Part shown: piece after piece, positions 315-12,458 of the stretch
Layout of the letters: each line of letters begins with the position of its first letter
Numbering within the stretch: position 1 is the stretch's first letter
IMG/VR virus record: IMGVR_UViG_2974636107_000001
Location: 1-13,669 of that record
Origin: Sulfolobus ellipsoid virus 1 and six more viruses of crenarchaea
DNA: 13,669 nucleotides
Strand: one strand, 5' to 3'
The notes under the pieces: generated by a model
Seen by the model: only the letters and a program-made list of their open reading frames with translations
The model's database searches: none
Told to the model about the DNA's origin: nothing
Made by a program: the position numbers and the translations under genes

Positions 315-489
315 GGTTGAAAGTATACCTGAGGAGATTATGGAAGAGGTAGGCGAATATATCGATATCTTCATTCAACTAACTGAAATTGCTGAGATGG
401 AAAGAGACGTTATCGTGGAGGAACAATTGAAAGATGAAGCAAAACAATTCGAAGAATATGAAGATTTCTGGTTTGACGTATACACATGA
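292..489 (+). CDS. Small, very acidic hypothetical protein (65 aa)
   Basis: ATG start and ATGA overlap with the next ORF. 23 D/E versus 3 K/R. Confidence 0.75.
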   Translation: MVDFPDIEVESIPEEIMEEVGEYIDIFIQLTEIAEMERDVIVEEQLKDEAKQFEEYEDFWFDVYT

Positions 490-869
490 CGAGATACAAT
501 TACATTAGGAATCTAAGAATAATCAGAGGAGAGGAAATCAAAGTAGGTGTGAGTAGCGATAGAATTCCAATGATAGAGATTGAGCCAGGACACAATGACC
601 CAGAAAGAATGTGTGTAATGTTCACGGCTATGGAATATAGTCATATACCATATCAAGCAGATAATCTAGACGAAGTATATGACTCATGTAAAATTTTGAC
701 AAGCAAGATTACTACTTACATAAATGTAGCAATAGGATTTGGCAAGAATTTGGGGCTCAAATTAAGCGAGATGATGTTGGTGACTAGAGATAAGTCGAAA
801 AGAGAATTCAAAGTTGGATTAGAATTGGGAATAAAATATGCATATAATTGGACCTGTAAGTTTCAGTAG
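486..869 (+). CDS. Hypothetical protein (127 aa)
   Basis: ATGA-coupled to the upstream ORF, same strand as all other genes. Confidence 0.75.
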   Translation: MTRYNYIRNLRIIRGEEIKVGVSSDRIPMIEIEPGHNDPERMCVMFTAMEYSHIPYQADNLDEVYDSCKILTSKITTYINVAIGFGKNLGLKLSEMMLVTRDKSKREFKVGLELGIKYAYNWTCKFQ

Positions 870-1011
870 GACGGTATTCCTAGATTTCTACAATTATTTA
901 TTACAAAGTGGTCTTTATGAAACGCTAAGAATAGATAGAAAGTACATTGAATATACATTGAAAAATAAATATGCTACACTAAGATTATATGGCAAGTACG
1001 TTCACACATGA
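838..1011 (+). CDS. Hypothetical protein (57 aa, [57 protein letters not shown]), not in ORF track
   Basis: ATG at 838 with GGGA upstream, TGA at 1009-1011. Exactly fills the gap between 486..869 and 989..1180. Confidence 0.6.
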
Positions 1012-1180
1012 CGTAATAGTAATGGAATGTTATGAGGAGGCATTAGCTGTAATGAGGTGTGAGGTGGCATATGACAGAGTGTTGACTAAATGGATGGAAC
1101 CAAGCTTACCGTTGTTGAGACTTGATAATGAAATTATAAAGCCTTATATGAAAGTAAAATACGTGTATAAACAATTATGA
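989..1180 (+). CDS. Hypothetical protein (63 aa)
   Basis: ORF track entry, in the operon-like run. Its stop overlaps ATG 1177. Confidence 0.65.
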
Positions 1181-1534
1181 TGAGCAGAATAGACAAAGAA
1201 GTAAAGAAAATAATGCAAATATATAGAGGCACTGAAGGCTCAGTGCAATGATAATGACCTAGAATGTTGGCTTAAGAAGGCGGTAATTATGGCAGAGCTG
1301 AATAAGGCTATCGACAAGCTGACATATAAATTGGCAATGAATTACCCATATACGGCAGACATTGCTGAAAAGCTGATAGAATTAGGATTAATTAGACAGG
1401 AGAAGTGGCTGAAGGCAATTAATGACACAAAGAGGTTTAAAGATAAGATATTGGACAAGCGTAATTCTAACAATAAAATAGAAAAATCAGAGAATACAGG
1501 AGAGAATCATGATAATAATCAAGACCAAAAATAG
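1177..1534 (+). CDS. Helical hypothetical protein (~118 aa) interrupted by a +1 frameshift near 1214-1226 (ORF track shows only 1289..1534)
   Basis: ATGA-coupled start at 1177 ([15 protein letters not shown]) stops at 1251. The 1289 frame is open from 1214 ([28 protein letters not shown]...). Confidence 0.6.
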
Positions 1535-1850
1535 AGAATATACGATAGATGAGAATAAGGAGATAAATTCCATAAGTGCAGCTGATACTATATGTCCATA
1601 TCGTGCATATCGGTCGTATCATAGAAAAATCCCAATAAAAATCGACGATTGTAAAGAGGCGAGAAAGATAGCTGGGAGCATGACGCATTACGTCATATTG
1701 CGACAGCTAAAGGAGCAGGGATGTGAGACGGAAAAGATAGTTGACCCAGAGCTGAAGTTTAGAGCTGATGCTATATGTGATGGGGACGCATTGTTGAGAT
1801 TAAGACAAACTTCAATCGGGACTGGCATGCGCTTAATAAGTGGCAATTGA
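1509..1850 (+). CDS. TP1: N-terminal part of a Cas4-family nuclease, described as TTV1 nucleocapsid protein TP1 (113 aa)
   Basis: GGAG SD upstream. Contains the first Fe-S Cys (ICPYRAY), GxxxH (GSMTHY) and motif II (RADAICDG). Length and sequence match my recollection of TTV1 TP1. Confidence 0.85.
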   Translation: MIIIKTKNREYTIDENKEINSISAADTICPYRAYRSYHRKIPIKIDDCKEARKIAGSMTHYVILRQLKEQGCETEKIVDPELKFRADAICDGDALLRLRQTSIGTGMRLISGN

Positions 1851-2077
1851 AAGTGTATATAGCGCTGGCAGGTGCTGAGAGAGGACACCTAATATACATT
1901 AACAATGGCATAAGGACGACAATACAAATGGACGAAGAGGAGCGAGTAAAAATTACTGAGTATGTTAGAAATCTGATAAGACGAATAAAAAATGGAGAAG
2001 CTGTGGAGGAGAGGAATAGAGGAATATGGTGTAACATATGCGAATTTAAAGCTGAATGTAATCATAAATTGCTATGA
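1781..2077 (+). CDS. cas4: C-terminal part of the Cas4-family nuclease in the -1 frame (ORF track calls 1847..2077)
   Basis: Frame open from 1781: GRIVEIKT (ExK), WQLKVY (QxxxY), [10 protein letters not shown] (CxxC-x5-C of the Fe-S cluster). Confidence 0.9.
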
Positions 2078-2671: not shown

Positions 2672-2673
2672 AT

Positions 2674-2688
2674 GAAAAAGTTTATAAA
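2674..2688 (+). promoter_or_regulatory. BRE + TATA promoter of the major capsid operon
   Basis: GAAAAAG-TTTATAAA, with ATG 2708 20 nt downstream (leaderless spacing). Confidence 0.75.
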
Positions 2689-2707
2689 TAGATTGTTACT
2701 TATGCTT

Positions 2708-3076
2708 ATGTCAGTAGTTGTTGGAAGAATTGCTGGAGCTAATGAGTTGGAAATGCGGTACCAAGCTGGGATTGAGGTTAAACGTGATGTTCAAGTCAAA
2801 AGAGTTGAGAGAAAGATATCGTATAGAGCGCCTAGAATAGAGGACGCAATAGCGTTGAACATATATGTTGAGGATAAGATTAGTGGAATTAAGCCGTATA
2901 TACCTGGTCTAACGGGATTGGTAAGAAAGGCGATTAAAATAGCATATCGTGATGGGGTTGACAGTGCAATGAATATATTTAAGTCATATGATACCGCAAT
3001 ACAGAATGAAATAAGGAAAATAATCGAAGAGGGTCTAAAAATGTATGAAAAAATAAGGAGTGAGGGTAGGCCATGA
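2708..3076 (+). CDS. Major capsid protein 1 homolog (PFV VP1/MCP1-like, SIRV2-fold family), 122 aa from MSVVVGR
   Basis: Basic helical protein behind a strong promoter and coupled to MCP2. MSVV..R...A..L......GIE and PYIPGLTGLVRK resemble my recollection of Pyrobaculum filamentous virus MCP1. The ORF-track start (2672) lies upstream of the TATA box. Confidence 0.7.
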   Translation: MSVVVGRIAGANELEMRYQAGIEVKRDVQVKRVERKISYRAPRIEDAIALNIYVEDKISGIKPYIPGLTGLVRKAIKIAYRDGVDSAMNIFKSYDTAIQNEIRKIIEEGLKMYEKIRSEGRP

Positions 3077-3498
3077 GCTCCCCTATAATTAGTAATTATC
3101 TTGAGGGAATTCGCGATAATAAATATCTGCAACGGATAGAATGGGAAATACAGGTAGCTCAGAGCGGATTCAGAGCTATTCCAATTACTGAGAGATGGTG
3201 GGGTGAGGCATCATATTATATAGACCTAGCCAACAAGATAAAGGCTTTGCCCGAATTGAGCAATGTTAAGACTAAGCCGATTGGATATGCGTTGGCCGCG
3301 GCGAGATACGTTAAACACAACAACTTCGGCATGGCCGAGATATACCTTGATAGATTTGAGTCTGCGCTTGTCCGTAGCGGACTGTCGAGAGATATGGCGA
3401 GAAGGGTTAGAGAGCATGTGGCAAAAATGATAGGGCTTGGTGGTGGAGGCGGTGGTGGAGGAGGCGGTGGAGGCGGTGGTGGAGTAAGTTTGCCTTAA
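3073..3498 (+). CDS. TP2: Major capsid/nucleocapsid protein 2 (probably TP2), 141 aa with C-terminal poly-Gly tail
   Basis: ATGA-coupled to MCP1. Basic helical protein ending in Gly15-VSLP, as I recall for tristromavirus MCP2. Confidence 0.75.
   Translation: MSSPIISNYLEGIRDNKYLQRIEWEIQVAQSGFRAIPITERWWGEASYYIDLANKIKALPELSNVKTKPIGYALAAARYVKHNNFGMAEIYLDRFESALVRSGLSRDMARRVREHVAKMIGLGGGGGGGGGGGGGGGVSLP
3439..3483 (+). repeat. (GGN)15 poly-glycine coding tract
   Basis: ggt/gga/ggc codons, 45 nt, in frame. Confidence 0.95.
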
Positions 3499-5020: not shown

Positions 5021-5503
5021 ATGGTTGAGATTAAACTAGTTAATAAGGAAATAATAAAGTTTGGATTGGCACTTGGAATTGTGAATGAGCTTAATGAATA
5101 CCTATACGCGGCAATGCCTCCAATGTATGACATATTATCTAAATTGTACGGATATGGAAGGACTGTAAATGCAATGCTGTATAGTGTGCTGTTTAATTTA
5201 CTCGAATCGAGGATTGATACACTGAGAAGACTTGACCTTAGTAAGTTCTTTGCTGTGGTAGCATATATGGATGCTGTTAAAGATACCGTTGAGCTTGCAA
5301 TAAATGGATATGCATATGTTACGACTTCTGGATTTACAGTGTATCCTGCATCACAGATTACAGGAACGTATGAGAGCGACTTCAGTCAAGCTAAGGCAGT
5401 ACCCGCAAATACTACAGCAACACAGGTGTGGTTTGCACCCAAGAAGTTTGCTTTGATTACACAGAATAAGATATATACATTCCTAGCTCCTTATTGGTTC
5501 TAA
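5021..5503 (+). CDS. TP3: Envelope/matrix structural protein TP3 (160 aa, PFV VP3-like)
   Basis: Hydrophobic helical protein with its own strong promoter. Length matches my recollection of TTV1 TP3. Confidence 0.7.
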   Translation: MVEIKLVNKEIIKFGLALGIVNELNEYLYAAMPPMYDILSKLYGYGRTVNAMLYSVLFNLLESRIDTLRRLDLSKFFAVVAYMDAVKDTVELAINGYAYVTTSGFTVYPASQITGTYESDFSQAKAVPANTTATQVWFAPKKFALITQNKIYTFLAPYWF

Positions 5504-8735: not shown

Positions 8736-8998
8736 ATGATTTTTCATAAGGACTCGAGAACAATAGACTTGGATTATGGTCATATTATTATGGGTATTGA
8801 AAGGAAATCTCGAGGAAATTATGACCTATATATACTGATTAAGAAGGAAGGAAAATTTGAAGTTGACAGTATATTTACTGGAGATGTAATGGTGGTTGAT
8901 AGAGGAAGTTTTGTATCGACTTCTAGAGGATTCCCGATGCTTCTTGTAGAGGTTCCCGATCGATAGATTTTAATGCGGTTAAAACTAAATGGACATGA
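8736..8998 (+). CDS. Hypothetical protein (~72 aa after removing the vector-like insert, ...[17 protein letters not shown])
   Basis: Deleting 8920-8963 gives a frame ending TGA 8996-8998, an ATGA overlap with the GT start at 8995. Confidence 0.65.
8915..8964. other. Polylinker-like insert at a ClaI junction (probable artefact)
   Basis: ATCGAC-TTCTAGAGGATTCCC...ATCGAT resembles pUC TCGACTCTAGAGGATCCCC. Near-copy at 9834-9881. Confidence 0.75.
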
Positions 8999-10005
8999 TT
9001 TTGGGTATTAGTGCATATAGAAAAGAAACAAAAACGGGTCTGAGAAACACGATTTATACGGCAATAAATACGGGAAAAGTAAAGAAGATACTTCTGGGAC
9101 TCGATAAACCTGAAGATAAGGAGATATTCAACGACATAATAAACGAATTTAAAGACTATATTATAGACGTAGTATACGCAGAAGGATTGGGAGCTAATAG
9201 AAATGAACTATTAGTACGTGGTTCTGAAGAAAATGAAGACTACATATGCTTGGCTGACAGCCACCTATACTTCATTACACCAGTGGCAGACATAGTTAAA
9301 ACGATGTGTAACTCTCAGGCATGTGATTTCAAACGATTTGACTTTGGATTTGATGTTGAGAACAACCCACTATCAGTACTTAATAGATCGGTACATCACT
9401 TCGGTCAGTTTAATATCGACAGGTTGGCCAATAACTATATCTTCAGTTGTGAATACAAATACTATGCCAATAATCCATTCTTATGCTTCAAGAAAAGCGC
9501 AATTAAGGAGCTACTTAATATATATGGAGGAAAAATAATACCGTGGCAACACTATGGAGCTGATATGGAACAGATATACGTTTCAATAGTGAGAAGATAT
9601 GGGAGAACAGCTGGCAAATGTATCGGAACTTCACCAATATACGGACATAGAGCTACTGTAAGTAATACTGAACATGAATTTTGGAAATCGAGATGGACGA
9701 TTAAAGATTATAGCGAAGGATGGTATCAAGCAAATGCGTGCTTCCTTGCACTTCATATACCTCGAGAGTTGTGGAATCTGAAACCAAGAATATTTGAACC
9801 AGACAAATGTAAATTACATATAAACTTTATAAAATCGACTCTAGAGGATTCCCAAGCTTCTTCTAGAGGTACCGCATCGATGATATATGCAGTTGATGGA
9901 ATAGATAGAAACATACTTAACTATCTAGGTAAATATACGGCTGATAGTACTGGAACTGTAAGCTTAACCAATCTTCAACCTGGTAAATATATAGCTATTG
10001 AGTAA
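8995..10005 (+). CDS. GT-A fold glycosyltransferase (GT2-like, DSH motif); C-terminal ~55 aa unreliable
   Basis: MILGISAY strand, [15 protein letters not shown] and [15 protein letters not shown] motifs. It spans the vector-like insert at 9834-9881. Confidence 0.85.
9834..9881. other. Polylinker-like insert at a ClaI junction (probable artefact)
   Basis: ATCGACTCTAGAGGATTCCCAAGCTT...GGTACC..ATCGAT packs XbaI, HindIII and KpnI sites. The first 15 nt after A (TCGACTCTAGAGGAT) match the pUC polylinker. Confidence 0.8.
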
Positions 10006-10006
10006 T

Positions 10007-11089
10007 GTGTCGTACCAAATAACTATAAATAATAATACTACAAGTAACGTTCAAAATATAGTTATAGCTGATCCTAATCTAGCATCTTTAGGTGAAAATG
10101 TAGTATTTAGTGATTCTCAAGGACCATTATCATCGTTGTATGTATATGATGGTGTATGGGTAGTTAAATTAAGGTCACCGCTTTCACCTGGACAGAGTAT
10201 AACAATAACAGCATCTAGTGGTACACCTAATATAGACCCCACAATAGCACTATACTATAATAATGGAAGCTCATATTCAAACCTTACACTAGTAGGTTCA
10301 CCTACAGTATCTATTGTACAGGACTTTGGTGGATATGCAATAAGTGCATATGCATCTGGGGACTTCTTCTTAGTAGCATCGCCTACTGGATTTACTCCAA
10401 GTAGCAGTAGACTACTAGTTGTTGATAGATGGGCAACTACTCCTACGAGTCTTGACGCAGTAGGTTTGAGGTTATATGCAGATACTAACGACTGGTTCGG
10501 TGTAGTTAGGAAATATATTAATGGAGCTCAGAATGTAAGCATTGAACAAAAGATATCTGGAACATATTCAGTAGTAAATGAAATAGATATATCACAGTTT
10601 GCGGCATTTACTGATCCATTAGTAATGTACTTATCAATAAATGGAAGTACTGCAAACGTAAAGGTATACAAACAGGGCTCAAACATTGGAACTGTAAGTG
10701 GTAACTATTCTACTACTCCATATGGAAATCCATCTATGGCAGGATATGGAACAGTTGATAAGCATTATGCTAACTTTATTGTGTTACCATATGAGCCAGA
10801 CCCACAGGTAACAGTTACTCCTATATCTTCACCATCTCCTACTCCTACACCGACACCGACGCCTACGCCTACACCGACATATGATATCACTTATGTAGTA
10901 TTTGATGTAACGCCTTCACCTACTCCAACTCCTACTCTTACATCGACACCCACTCCTACTCCTACGCCAACATATGATATAACTTATGTAATATTCGATG
11001 TAACACCTTCACCCACACCTACTCCAACACCTACTCCTACACCAACTCCGACGCCAACTCCTACATCGACAACGTCATCTAACATCTAG
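10007..11089 (+). CDS. TPX: TPX surface protein (360 aa from GTG): DUF2341-like N-terminus, beta-sandwich/lectin-like domain, Thr-Pro stalk; anchor in the +1 frame to 11222
   Basis: [20 protein letters not shown] resembles DUF2341. Thr-Pro blocks are separated by YDITYV(V/I)FDV. Matches my recollection of TTV1 TPX. Confidence 0.85.
10832..11066 (+). repeat. Three Thr-Pro blocks separated by two copies of a 10-codon spacer (93-bp period)
   Basis: acatatgatatcacttatgtagtatttgatgtaacgccttcacc at 10877 and acatatgatataacttatgtaatattcgatgtaacaccttcacc at 10970. Confidence 0.95.
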
Positions 11090-11231
11090 TTGTAATCCAA
11101 TAATAACAACAGGTATTCAATTCCTTGACAGTATAGTATTGTGTATAAATGGATTGGGAATAACAGTGTTCATAATAATGCTAATTGTAATAGCAATAAT
11201 AATTATAGCATATATAATATGATAAACATAG

Positions 11232-11873: not shown

Positions 11874-12458
11874 GTATCTGCAACTCCAACGCCTACGCCT
11901 ACACCCACACCAACGCCAACTCCGACGCCTACTCCTACCCCTACTCCGACACCTACGCCGACTCCCACTCCAACACCTACTCCGACTCCGACACCTACTC
12001 CAACACCAACGCCAACTCCGACACCGACTCCAACGCCAACGCCTACTCCTACACCAACCCCAACACCTACCCCTACTCCTACACCTACGCCGACTCCGAC
12101 TCCGACACCCACTCCTACGCCTACTCCGACTCCTACCCCAACTCCTACTCCCACTCCCACCCCTACTCCGACTCCAACACCGACTCCGACACCTACTCCG
12201 ACGCCTACTCCGACTCCAACGCCGACTCCTACACCAACGCCTTCACCTACACCAACTCCCACCCCTACTCCGACTCCGACGCCAACTCCGACTCCCACTC
12301 CAACGCCTACACCAACTCCGACGTCATGTAAACCGATAATTACTACTGGAGTATCATGGTTAGATACAACGATAATATGTGCTGGAAGTGTTGGTATTTC
12401 GCTATTTGAAATATTACTATCAATACTAGTAATACTGCTTATAATAGCACTGATATAA
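11874..12458 (+). pseudogene. Start-less TPX-like cassette: (Thr-Pro)~73 plus a C-terminal membrane anchor
   Basis: Frame open 11862-12458 with no ATG/GTG/TTG start before the tract. Ends [44 protein letters not shown]. Confidence 0.75.
11883..12323 (+). repeat. 441-nt (ACN CCN)n Thr-Pro repeat with a single Ser
   Basis: 147 codons alternating T/P using all synonymous codons. One TCA at about 12243. Confidence 0.97.

What the first reader, a model, noticed from the sequence alone, without database searches (positions are those of the whole stretch)
1509..2077. One extra G restores a complete, catalytically intact Cas4 from 'TP1' plus the next ORF
TP1 is known as a capsid protein exapted from a split, inactivated Cas4. 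However, the -1 frame opens at 1781, long before the annotated 1847 start. Adding one G to GGGG at 1782-1785 gives ...[16 protein letters not shown]...WQLKVY...[10 protein letters not shown], a 189-aa protein with all RecB-type motifs and four Fe-S cysteines. The missing ExK motif is present, just out of frame. Either the split is a sequencing error (this record has six other one-base shifts), which would undermine the exaptation model, or the virus makes both a short DNA-binding form and a full nuclease by recoding or phase variation. There is no canonical X XXY YYZ slippery heptamer at the site.
Basis: partly seen in the sequence, partly recalled or inferred. Interest (0 to 1): 0.85.

Follow-up and report, generated by a model that had tools for sequence, protein, structure and literature searches.

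The report
Frame-broken viral Cas4 nuclease gene
The 'capsid protein TP1' gene of the archaeal virus TTV1 and the small ORF after it are the two halves of one ordinary, fully conserved Cas4-like nuclease gene, separated only by a one-base frame break at a run of four Gs. The break is most likely an error in the 1989 sequence or a very recent mutation, which weakens a much-cited example of an enzyme turned into a capsid protein.

Summary
TP1 (1509..1850, frame 0) matches Cas4-like proteins only up to FRADAICDG (nt 1784). The -1 frame opens at 1781 and from nt 1787 reads RIVEIKT...WQLKVY...[10 protein letters not shown] up to the stop at 2077. New comparators settle the anatomy: at least 36 intact Cas4-like proteins of 179-208 aa (most 189 aa). 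Those I looked up lie in PFV/TTV1-like (tristromavirus-like) metagenomic contigs, at the same gene position. Against their profile, the frame-0 piece covers positions 3-93 and the frame-2 piece positions 94-187, with no gap or overlap. All catalytic residues and all four cysteines are kept. Neither half has evolved unusually fast. TP1's 21-residue tail is out-of-frame sequence, not a mutated motif III as published. The two genes just upstream are also frame-broken relative to intact relatives, and a polylinker-like stretch sits at 9834-9880, so the record contains artefacts. Most likely the split is a sequencing or cloning error (about 0.55). A real, recent frameshift comes second (about 0.33) and is supported only by the reported ~14 kDa gel size of TP1. 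Programmed recoding has no support: no slippery site, no RNA structure, and relatives are in frame. No second TTV1 sequence exists in the collections searched, so only resequencing or mass spectrometry can decide.

The parts
1509..1784 (+). N-terminal half of the Cas4-like gene in frame 0 (TP1 residues 1-92). It carries Cys1 in TICPYRAY (1587-1610), the conserved His in MTHYV (1680-1694) and the motif II Asp in FRADAICDG (1758-1784).
   Evidence: Matches positions 3-93 of the HMM built from five intact relatives (64 bits, E 7e-21) and scores 68.0 bits against the 36-member HMM. tblastn with intact orthologues ends at 1781-1784.
1782..1787 (+). Frame-break zone: the GGGG run 1782-1785 plus two bases. 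The reading frame of the homology changes here from frame 0 to the -1 frame.
   Evidence: Frame-0 homology ends at 1784 and frame-2 homology starts at 1787, at consecutive HMM positions 93/94. The family alignment shows FRADAVCDG-Y-VIELK in P0015 against FRADAICDG | RIVEIK here.
1785..1850 (+). Out-of-frame tail of annotated TP1 ([21 protein letters not shown] plus the TGA stop). It has no counterpart in any relative.
   Evidence: Adds 1.4 bits to the family HMM score and scores -2.9 bits alone. The published 'Glu to Arg in motif III' (PMC4625639) falls in this tail.
1781..2077 (+). C-terminal half of the Cas4-like gene in the -1 frame, with homology from 1787. It carries motif III ExK in RIVEIKT (1787-1807), QhxxY in WQLKVY (1841-1858) and CxxCx5C in [11 protein letters not shown] (2027-2059). 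The stop overlaps the next gene's ATG (ATGA at 2074-2077).
   Evidence: Matches HMM positions 94-187 (87 bits, E 6e-28). Hits Pfam Cas_Cas4 and PDDEXK_1 and PDB 4r5q and 4ic1. No ATG/GTG/TTG occurs before 1847.
1847..2077 (+). Published 'ORF7/gp7' (1853-2074 in the literature; TTG 1847 or GTG 1853 as putative start). This is the part of the -1 frame lying downstream of the TP1 stop.
   Evidence: PMC4625639; the ORF listing. Only weak start codons are present.
1177..1534 (+). Upstream neighbour gene (family of 121-145 aa in relatives), also frame-broken. An ATG at 1177 in frame 1 overlaps the previous stop as ATGA. Homology then continues in frame 2 from about 1232, while the first start codon in frame 2 is only at 1289. 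The break lies around 1216-1232.
   Evidence: Frame-2 piece 1214-1531 matches HMM positions 23-119 (E 9e-18), beginning 19 codons before the first start codon. The frame-1 N-terminus [16 protein letters not shown] resembles the relatives' N-termini, but not significantly on its own.
486..1180 (+). Second upstream gene (family of 219-224 aa in relatives), spread over frames 0, 1 and probably 2. Breaks lie at about 835-866 and possibly about 983-1008.
   Evidence: Frame-0 piece 477-866 matches HMM positions 7-103 (E 3.5e-8). Frame-1 piece 835-1008 matches HMM positions 116-162 (E 1.5e-3). tblastn shows a two-frame match. The third piece is plausible by eye only.

Best explanation
Positions 1509-2077 hold one gene. 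It is the TTV1 orthologue of a Cas4-like PD-(D/E)xK / Fe-S nuclease, about 189 aa long, that PFV/TTV1-like (tristromavirus-like) genomes carry at this same position in the left arm, upstream of the capsid genes.

In this record the gene is interrupted by a single one-base frame break inside or next to the G4 run at 1782-1785. 'TP1' is therefore the N-terminal 92 residues of the nuclease plus 21 out-of-frame residues. 'gp7' is the tail end of the nuclease's normal frame. The break is not an old gene split, and motif III was not lost by substitution.

The most likely cause is an error in the 1989 record: either a gel compression at a G run or a mutation in the sequenced clone. On that reading the virus makes a normal full-length nuclease, presumably for genome replication, repair or end processing as in other archaeal viruses.

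Shown here: the anatomy, the homology, the synteny, the conservation and the other frame breaks. Inferred: that the break is an artefact, and the enzyme's role.
For: - Seamless junction. The frame-0 piece covers family HMM positions 3-93 and the frame-2 piece positions 94-187. Orthologue tblastn switches frame between 1781 and 1787.
- Intact relatives. There are 36 intact relatives of 179-208 aa, mostly 189 aa. The six looked up lie in contigs that carry PFV_capsid and FV_peptidase genes or a TTV1-like gene order, with the same gene order as the window. None of these is split.
- Residues kept. TTV1 keeps 29 of 34 family-conserved columns, and the five differences are conservative. It keeps His, Asp, Glu-x-Lys, Gln/Tyr and all four Cys.
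- No acceleration. ML distances give an N-half/C-half ratio of 0.72, inside the family range 0.62-0.95. Terminal branches are 0.87 and 0.79.
- The frame-2 overlap adds 21.7 bits and the frame-0 tail 1.4 bits.
- Cas4 identity. The family profile hits Cas4 SSO0001 at E 2e-12. An AlphaFold model of orthologue P0015 (pLDDT 91) best matches Cas4 structures 4ic1, 4r5q and 8d3l.
- Record quality. The two genes immediately upstream are also frame-broken relative to intact relatives, yet keep open, conserved downstream frames and ATGA gene junctions. A polylinker-like 44-nt stretch shared with an unrelated phiH record sits at 9834-9877.
- No structural need. TTV1 encodes homologues of both PFV nucleocapsid proteins, and in PFV2 these two alone coat the DNA (PMC7189273).
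Against: - PMC4625639 reports that virion protein TP1 runs at ~14 kDa. The short product is predicted at 12.9 kDa and a full-length protein at 21.6 kDa. The authors use this explicitly to exclude a sequencing error.
- If the gene is intact, the 14 kDa species carrying this N-terminus would have to be a processed fragment or a mis-assigned band. I could not read the 1983 and 1989 primary papers.
- The TP1 gene was itself the subject of the 1989 sequencing paper, so it may have been read more carefully than its flanks.
- No independent TTV1 sequence exists to check against.
- Codon statistics cannot tell the two frames apart over the 21 overlapping codons.
Confidence: 0.55

Rival explanations
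1. The frame break is real but recent. A one-base slip at the G run in the TTV1 isolate, or its laboratory lineage, truncated the nuclease. The virus then makes a 12.9 kDa N-terminal fragment with a basic 21-residue out-of-frame tail (TP1). This fragment still binds DNA and is found in virions. The downstream frame is a young remnant that has not yet decayed.
For: - Gel mass ~14 kDa against 12.9 kDa predicted, and the 1989 assignment of TP1 to this ORF (PMC4625639).
- The break lies in a homopolymer run, where polymerases slip.
- The tail has pI 11.7 and TP1 overall pI 8.9.
- Intact motifs and equal divergence of the two halves are what a very young frameshift would show.
Against: - It needs a coincidence with at least two other frame breaks in the adjacent genes. 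Alternatively all three genes would be freshly broken in a viable virus.
- The fragment would keep only two of the core beta-strands of the PD-(D/E)xK fold and one of the four Fe-S cysteines (model of the orthologue), so a stable fold is doubtful.
- Being both 'recent' and a 'major equimolar nucleocapsid protein' is hard to reconcile.
- TTV1 has both PFV-type capsid protein genes.
Confidence: 0.33
2. One gene yields two products. Ribosomal -1 frameshifting at U GGG GAC, transcriptional slippage, or G4/G5 heterogeneity in the virus population gives abundant short TP1 and a small amount of full-length nuclease.
For: - ExK and half of QhxxY lie in a stretch (1787-1846) with no start codon of its own. 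As the sequence stands, these residues can only be translated as a continuation of the TP1 frame.
- Full conservation of the downstream frame.
Against: - There is no X XXY YYZ heptamer, and re-pairing of tRNA-Gly from GGG to UGG is poor.
- The downstream RNA fold is no better than shuffled sequences (z = -0.03).
- Every relative looked at encodes the protein in one frame, so the shift is not a conserved feature.
- Four Gs is short for slippage.
Confidence: 0.05
3. The published model as written. An old split of Cas4 within the QhxxY motif produced two genes. TP1 lost catalytic residues by substitution (motif III Glu to Arg) and was exapted as a major nucleocapsid protein, while gp7 is a separate or dead ORF.
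For: PMC4625639: HHpred links for both ORFs, the gel mass of TP1, and the older biochemistry describing TP1 as DNA-binding.
Against: - The homology changes frame at 1782-1787, not at the TP1 stop.
- The true motif III and the whole of QhxxY are present in the -1 frame.
- The residues that paper aligned to motif III belong to an out-of-frame tail that adds nothing to the family score.
- The N half shows no acceleration and the C half no decay.
- A 98-codon open -1 frame has P about 2e-5 if it were unselected.
Confidence: 0.03

Closest known systems
Cas4 nucleases SSO0001 (PDB 4ic1) and Pcal_0546 (PDB 4r5q)
   Same: Same fold and motifs: an N-terminal Cys plus a C-terminal CxxCx5C, His, Asp, ExK and QhxxY. 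The family profile hits 4ic1 at E 2e-12 over nearly full length, and the orthologue model's best structural matches are these two. The frame-2 piece aligns to both.
   Different: It is virus-encoded rather than next to CRISPR-cas genes. It is shorter (189 aa against 203-216) and only about 22-24% identical. In this record it is interrupted by a frame break.
Cas4-like nucleases of other archaeal viruses (Rudiviridae such as SIRV2, Lipothrixviridae, Fuselloviridae), as listed in PMC4625639
   Same: A stand-alone viral Cas4-family nuclease in a filamentous virus of hyperthermophilic Crenarchaeota, presumably acting in genome replication or repair.
   Different: It belongs to a distinct sequence family confined, as far as I found, to PFV/TTV1-like contigs. 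IMG/VR hits outside this family are only 30-38% identical over 40-50 residues. Activity is untested.
TP1/gp7 'split Cas4' exaptation model (Krupovic et al. 2015, PMC4625639)
   Same: Same locus and same conclusion that TP1 plus the next ORF together make up a Cas4.
   Different: - The break is a one-base frame change at 1782-1787, about 20 codons upstream of where the paper places the split.
- Motif III and QhxxY are intact.
- Intact syntenic orthologues now exist.
- Neighbouring genes in the record are frame-broken too.
Programmed -1 frameshifting (bacterial dnaX; the Saccharolobus solfataricus alpha-fucosidase fucA; both from my own knowledge, not checked here)
   Same: Two overlapping frames, with the downstream one in -1 and lacking its own start for the conserved part.
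   Different: There is no slippery heptamer, no stimulatory structure, and the shift is not conserved in relatives.

Membership tests
Cas4 family (PF01930; PD-(D/E)xK nuclease with a 4Fe-4S or 2Fe-2S cluster) | RecB-type motif II (Asp) and motif III (Glu-x-Lys) | tested here: met
   FRADAICDG in frame 0 (1758-1784) and RIVEIKT in the -1 frame (1787-1807). Both fall on invariant family columns and align to 4r5q and 4ic1. They lie in different frames in this record.
Cas4 family (PF01930; PD-(D/E)xK nuclease with a 4Fe-4S or 2Fe-2S cluster) | QhxxY motif | tested here: met
   WQLKVY at 1841-1858 is complete in the -1 frame. Gln and Tyr fall on invariant columns.
Cas4 family (PF01930; PD-(D/E)xK nuclease with a 4Fe-4S or 2Fe-2S cluster) | Four cluster-binding cysteines: one N-terminal and three C-terminal (CxxCx5C) | tested here: met
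   Cys in TICPYRAY (frame 0) and in [10 protein letters not shown] (-1 frame), all on invariant columns.
Cas4 family (PF01930; PD-(D/E)xK nuclease with a 4Fe-4S or 2Fe-2S cluster) | Significant match to the family model, and a Cas4 fold | tested here: met
   The C piece scores 30.8 bits against Pfam Cas_Cas4, above the 22.7 cut-off. The N piece alone has no Pfam hit. The orthologue family profile hits 4ic1 at E 2e-12. The orthologue model's top hits are 4ic1, 4r5q and 8d3l. The fold was tested on the intact orthologue, not on the TTV1 pieces.
Cas4 family (PF01930; PD-(D/E)xK nuclease with a 4Fe-4S or 2Fe-2S cluster) | One continuous polypeptide carrying all the motifs | tested here: not met
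   In the record as it stands the motifs are divided between two frames. Whether that is true of the virus cannot be told from this record.
Cas4 family (PF01930; PD-(D/E)xK nuclease with a 4Fe-4S or 2Fe-2S cluster) | Nuclease activity and a bound Fe-S cluster | not testable with these tools
   Needs expression and assay of an intact orthologue and of the TTV1 products.
Programmed -1 ribosomal frameshift site | Slippery heptamer X XXY YYZ in the zero frame | tested here: not met
   The site reads U GAU GGG GAC.
Programmed -1 ribosomal frameshift site | Stimulatory downstream stem-loop or pseudoknot | tested here: not met
   Fold of 1775-1880: -23.3 kcal/mol against -23.2 +/- 2.6 for shuffled sequences, z = -0.03.
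Programmed -1 ribosomal frameshift site | The shift is conserved in related genomes | tested here: not met
   All 36 relatives are single-frame proteins. The loci examined carry one uninterrupted gene.
Exapted capsid protein derived from an inactivated enzyme (published TP1 model) | Loss of catalytic residues by substitution | tested here: not met
   All catalytic residues are present. The apparent loss comes from reading the out-of-frame tail.
Exapted capsid protein derived from an inactivated enzyme (published TP1 model) | Changed selective regime: faster evolution of the recruited half, decay of the discarded half | tested here: not met
   Identity to the family is 38.9% for the N half and 30.5% for the C half. 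The ML N/C distance ratio is 0.72, within the family range 0.62-0.95. With only one TTV1 sequence no dN/dS is possible.
Exapted capsid protein derived from an inactivated enzyme (published TP1 model) | The short protein is a major virion component | not testable with these tools
   This rests on 1983-1989 biochemistry cited in PMC4625639; the primary papers are not held. TTV1 also encodes homologues of both PFV nucleocapsid proteins.

The most novel reading that the evidence does not exclude
TTV1 deliberately makes two proteins from one Cas4-like gene. One is an abundant truncated DNA-binding form (TP1), packaged in the virion. The other is a rare full-length Fe-S nuclease, produced by non-canonical -1 recoding or by G4/G5 length heterogeneity at 1782-1785. 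This would be a new kind of recoding site in a crenarchaeal virus, and a live intermediate in turning an enzyme into a capsid protein.
Probability: 0.05. Interest if true: 0.85.

Novelty: new member of a known kind. Interest (0 to 1): 0.6.

Why it matters
TP1 of TTV1 is cited as the first case of an enzyme exapted into a virus capsid protein (PMC4625639, repeated in PMC5704561).

This analysis shows that the evidence for inactivation came from reading an out-of-frame tail. That evidence was the motif III Glu to Arg change, the truncated QhxxY and the split gene. Related viruses carry the gene intact at the same position. The same old record has other frame breaks and apparent vector sequence.

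If the break is an artefact, the exaptation example disappears, and TTV1 simply has the Cas4-like nuclease shared by PFV/TTV1-like viruses. If the break is real, the event is very young and caused by a frameshift, which is a different and testable story.

The analysis also defines a Cas4-like gene family conserved in tristromavirus-like genomes. I found no mention of this family in the literature I could search.

Tried and rejected
- **Second copy of TTV1, to check the G run.** None was found. I tried megablast against phage records, the IMG/VR scan, which returned only the same record, word-based protein searches with TP1 and with the peptidase, which returned only themselves, and scans of metagenome and genome contigs.
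- **PFV1, PFV2 and the X14855 annotation.** These records are not in the collections. PFV-type capsid genes are absent from IMG/VR.
- **Primary and later papers.** Rensen 2016 and Krupovic 2018 are not held. No supplement is held for the PFV2 paper. I found no paper that corrects the 2015 model.
- **Codon-usage test for the true frame over the 21 overlapping codons.** Both frames score atypically (-2.7 and -1.9, against 9.2 +/- 4.9 for real genes), so the test is uninformative.
- **RNA structure downstream of the site.** None.
- **Distant Cas4 hits in IMG/VR.** These are unrelated viral lineages and do not bear on the question.
- **Plasmid search for the polylinker-like stretch.** No hit.
- **Joined protein.** Every test used the two pieces separately.

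Full report
**What the window is.** It is 13,669 bases long. Its coordinates agree with those given for Thermoproteus tenax virus 1 (X14855) in Krupovic et al. 2015, who place 'ORF7/gp7' at 1853-2074 just downstream of the TP1 gene (PMC4625639). The record length is confirmed in PMC3820453. IMG/VR holds the same 13,669-base contig. TTV1 is a virus of a hyperthermophilic archaeon.

**Checking the observation.**
- TP1 is the ORF 1509..1850 (113 aa, frame 0).
- The -1 frame has a TGA at 1778-1780, opens at 1781 and stays open for 98 codons to 2075-2077.
- GGGG lies at 1782-1785.
- The first ATG/GTG/TTG in that frame is the TTG at 1847.
- In the -1 frames of this window's genes, stop codons make up 10.4% of codons. 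So 22 open codons are unremarkable (P about 0.09), but 98 are not (P about 2e-5).
- TP1 alone has no Pfam hit. The -1 frame piece hits Cas_Cas4 and PDDEXK_1. Including 1781-1846 raises the Cas4 score from 25.2 to 30.8 bits and extends the match from model position 99 back to 68.
- phmmer against PDB aligns [23 protein letters not shown] with VEIKTGFSKEAH---KTQLQIYI of the Pyrobaculum Cas4 4r5q, and with the same region of SSO0001.

**New comparators.** An exhaustive phmmer search with the -1 frame piece found full-length proteins of 179-208 aa. A profile of five of them retrieved 36 clusters, most of them exactly 189 aa.

I fetched contigs for six of these clusters (12 loci). They show one conserved gene order:
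- a ~120-aa gene;
- a ~65-aa gene;
- a ~220-aa gene;
- a 121-145-aa gene;
- the Cas4-like gene;
- small ORFs;
- PFV_capsid (MCP1), then MCP2;
- further on, FV_peptidase and a VP3-like gene.

The window has the same order. These are therefore tristromavirus-like genomes, and the Cas4-like gene is uninterrupted in every one of these contigs.

The family profile hits Cas4 SSO0001 at E 2e-12 over nearly its whole length. An AlphaFold model of member P0015 (pLDDT 91) has Cas4 structures 4ic1, 4r5q and 8d3l as its best matches.

**Where the break is.** I searched the two pieces separately throughout.
- Against the HMM of five intact relatives, the frame-0 piece matches positions 3-93, with real similarity ending at FRADAICDG (nt 1784).
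- The -1 frame piece matches positions 94-187, starting at RIVEIK (nt 1787).
- tblastn with orthologues from four contigs switches frame between 1781 and 1787.
- In the family alignment P0015 reads FRADAVCDG-Y-VIELK where TTV1 reads FRADAICDG, then the frame change, then RIVEIK.
- Against the 36-member HMM the frame-2 overlap segment adds 21.7 bits. That is 10 SD above shuffled versions. TP1's frame-0 tail adds 1.4 bits.

So the disruption is one frame change at the G run. It is not a split inside QhxxY, and the published 'Glu to Arg in motif III' comes from aligning out-of-frame residues.

**Is either half degenerate or accelerated?**
- TTV1 keeps 29 of the 34 columns conserved in at least 85% of eight family representatives that are less than 70% identical to each other.
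- The five differences are V>I, R>K, V>I, M>I and L>A.
- His, Asp, Glu-x-Lys, Gln, Tyr and all four Cys are kept. Divergent intact members keep 26-30 of the 34 columns.
- Mean identity to the family is 38.9% for the N half and 30.5% for the C half.
- ML distances give an N/C ratio of 0.72, within the family range 0.62-0.95. Terminal branches are 0.87 and 0.79.

The part said to have become a capsid protein has not sped up, and the part said to be discarded has not decayed. This fits a gene that is intact, or was intact until very recently.

**Other problems in the record.**
- *Gene just upstream (121-145 aa in relatives).* Homology lies in frame 2 from about nt 1232 (HMM positions 23-119, E 9e-18). 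Frame 2 has no start codon before 1289. An ATG at 1177 in frame 1 overlaps the previous stop as ATGA, and it opens a peptide resembling the relatives' N-terminus.
- *Gene before that (219-224 aa in relatives).* It matches in frame 0 (477-866, HMM positions 7-103, E 3.5e-8) and then in frame 1 (835-1008, HMM positions 116-162, E 1.5e-3). A probable third piece lies in frame 2 and ends at the ATGA junction. The span 486-1180 is 231 codons.
- *Positions 9834-9880.* The sequence reads like a cloning polylinker (two XbaI sites, HindIII, KpnI, ClaI, and near-SalI/BamHI as in pUC). It is 97.7% identical to the last 43 bases of an unrelated Halobacterium phage phiH record.

**The counter-evidence.** Krupovic et al. 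argue against a sequencing error because TP1 runs at ~14 kDa, against 12.9 kDa predicted for the short form and 21.6 kDa for a full-length protein. This is the only evidence that the break is real, and I could not read the primary papers.

The argument is weaker than it looks. TTV1 also encodes two basic proteins of 15.3-15.4 kDa: ORF 2672..3076 and ORF 3073..3498. They are homologous to PFV MCP1 (E 5.5e-4; hhalign E 1e-4; syntenic) and to MCP2 (E 5e-11). In PFV2 these two proteins alone coat the DNA (PMC7189273). In PFV1 they are described as 14 kDa each (PMC12662031). The mass argument therefore depends on the 1989 assignment of that band's N-terminal sequence to ORF 1509.

**Recoding.**
- The site U GAU GGG GAC is not a slippery heptamer.
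- The downstream RNA folds no better than shuffled sequences (z = -0.03).
- Relatives are in frame.
- Codon statistics cannot separate the two frames over 21 codons.

The one point in its favour is that ExK lies in a stretch with no start codon of its own. An error or a young mutation explains that equally well.

**Weighing.** The anatomy is secure (about 0.95): one Cas4-like gene with one frame break at 1782-1787. For the cause I give:

| Cause | Estimate |
|---|---|
| Record artefact | 0.55 |
| Real but recent frameshift | 0.33 |
| Recoding or heterogeneity | 0.05 |
| Published old-split model | 0.03 |

The local density of frame problems makes an error in this 570-base gene likely a priori. 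The gel-mass argument pulls the other way by perhaps an order of magnitude. No second TTV1 sequence exists in any collection I could search. Only resequencing or mass spectrometry will settle it.

**Novelty and interest.** That TP1 plus gp7 equals a Cas4 is already known. New here are:
- the correct position and nature of the break;
- the intact motif III and QhxxY;
- the family of intact syntenic orthologues in tristromavirus-like genomes;
- the neighbouring frame breaks.

The object itself is an ordinary viral Cas4-like nuclease. The interest lies in revising a cited example of capsid-protein origin.

Noticed in passing
window 1177-1534: The gene just upstream of TP1 (121-145 aa in relatives) is frame-broken. 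Homology in frame 2 starts about 19 codons before the first start codon (1289). A frame-1 ATG at 1177 overlaps the previous stop as ATGA and opens a peptide resembling the relatives' N-terminus.
   Followed up: yes
window 486-1180: The ~220-aa conserved gene is spread over frame 0 (477-866), frame 1 (835-1008) and probably frame 2 (983-1177). The annotated ORFs 486..869 and 989..1180 look like fragments of one 231-codon gene.
   Followed up: yes
window 9834-9880: A polylinker-like sequence (XbaI twice, HindIII, KpnI, ClaI, near-SalI/BamHI) lies inside ORF 8989..10005. It is 97.7% identical to the last 43 bases of an unrelated Halobacterium phage phiH record (X80163). It is probably vector sequence left in both records. 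It sits just before the TTG-started ORF 9998..11089, so that gene junction may be artificial.
   Followed up: partly
window 2672-3498 and 5021-5503: ORFs 2672..3076 (15.4 kDa, pI 9.8) and 3073..3498 (15.3 kDa, pI 9.6) overlap by 4 nt as in relatives. They are homologues of the PFV nucleocapsid proteins MCP1 and MCP2. ORF 5021..5503 (18.1 kDa) is the VP3-like protein. TTV1 therefore has the standard tristromavirus nucleocapsid genes, which raises the question of what the biochemical 'TP1' band contained.
   Followed up: partly
loci L002, L003, L005, L006, L008-L013: Tristromavirus-like metagenomic contigs all carry an intact Cas4-like gene of about 189 aa at the same position. PMC7189273 states that tristromaviruses share no recognisable orthologues with rudiviruses and lipothrixviruses other than the capsid proteins. 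A Cas4-family nuclease is a further shared function, though it may have been acquired independently.
   Followed up: partly
window 11880-12340: A long (Pro-Thr)n repeat leaves all three forward frames open for more than 150 codons with no start codon. A similar PT-rich stretch at 11088-11171 lies just past the stop of ORF 9998..11089, in another frame.
   Followed up: no
window 1847-1850: The TP1 stop (TGA 1848-1850) overlaps the TTG at 1847 as TTGA, which mimics the ATGA gene junctions used throughout this genome. It is probably coincidental, because the conserved frame-2 sequence begins 20 codons earlier.
   Followed up: partly
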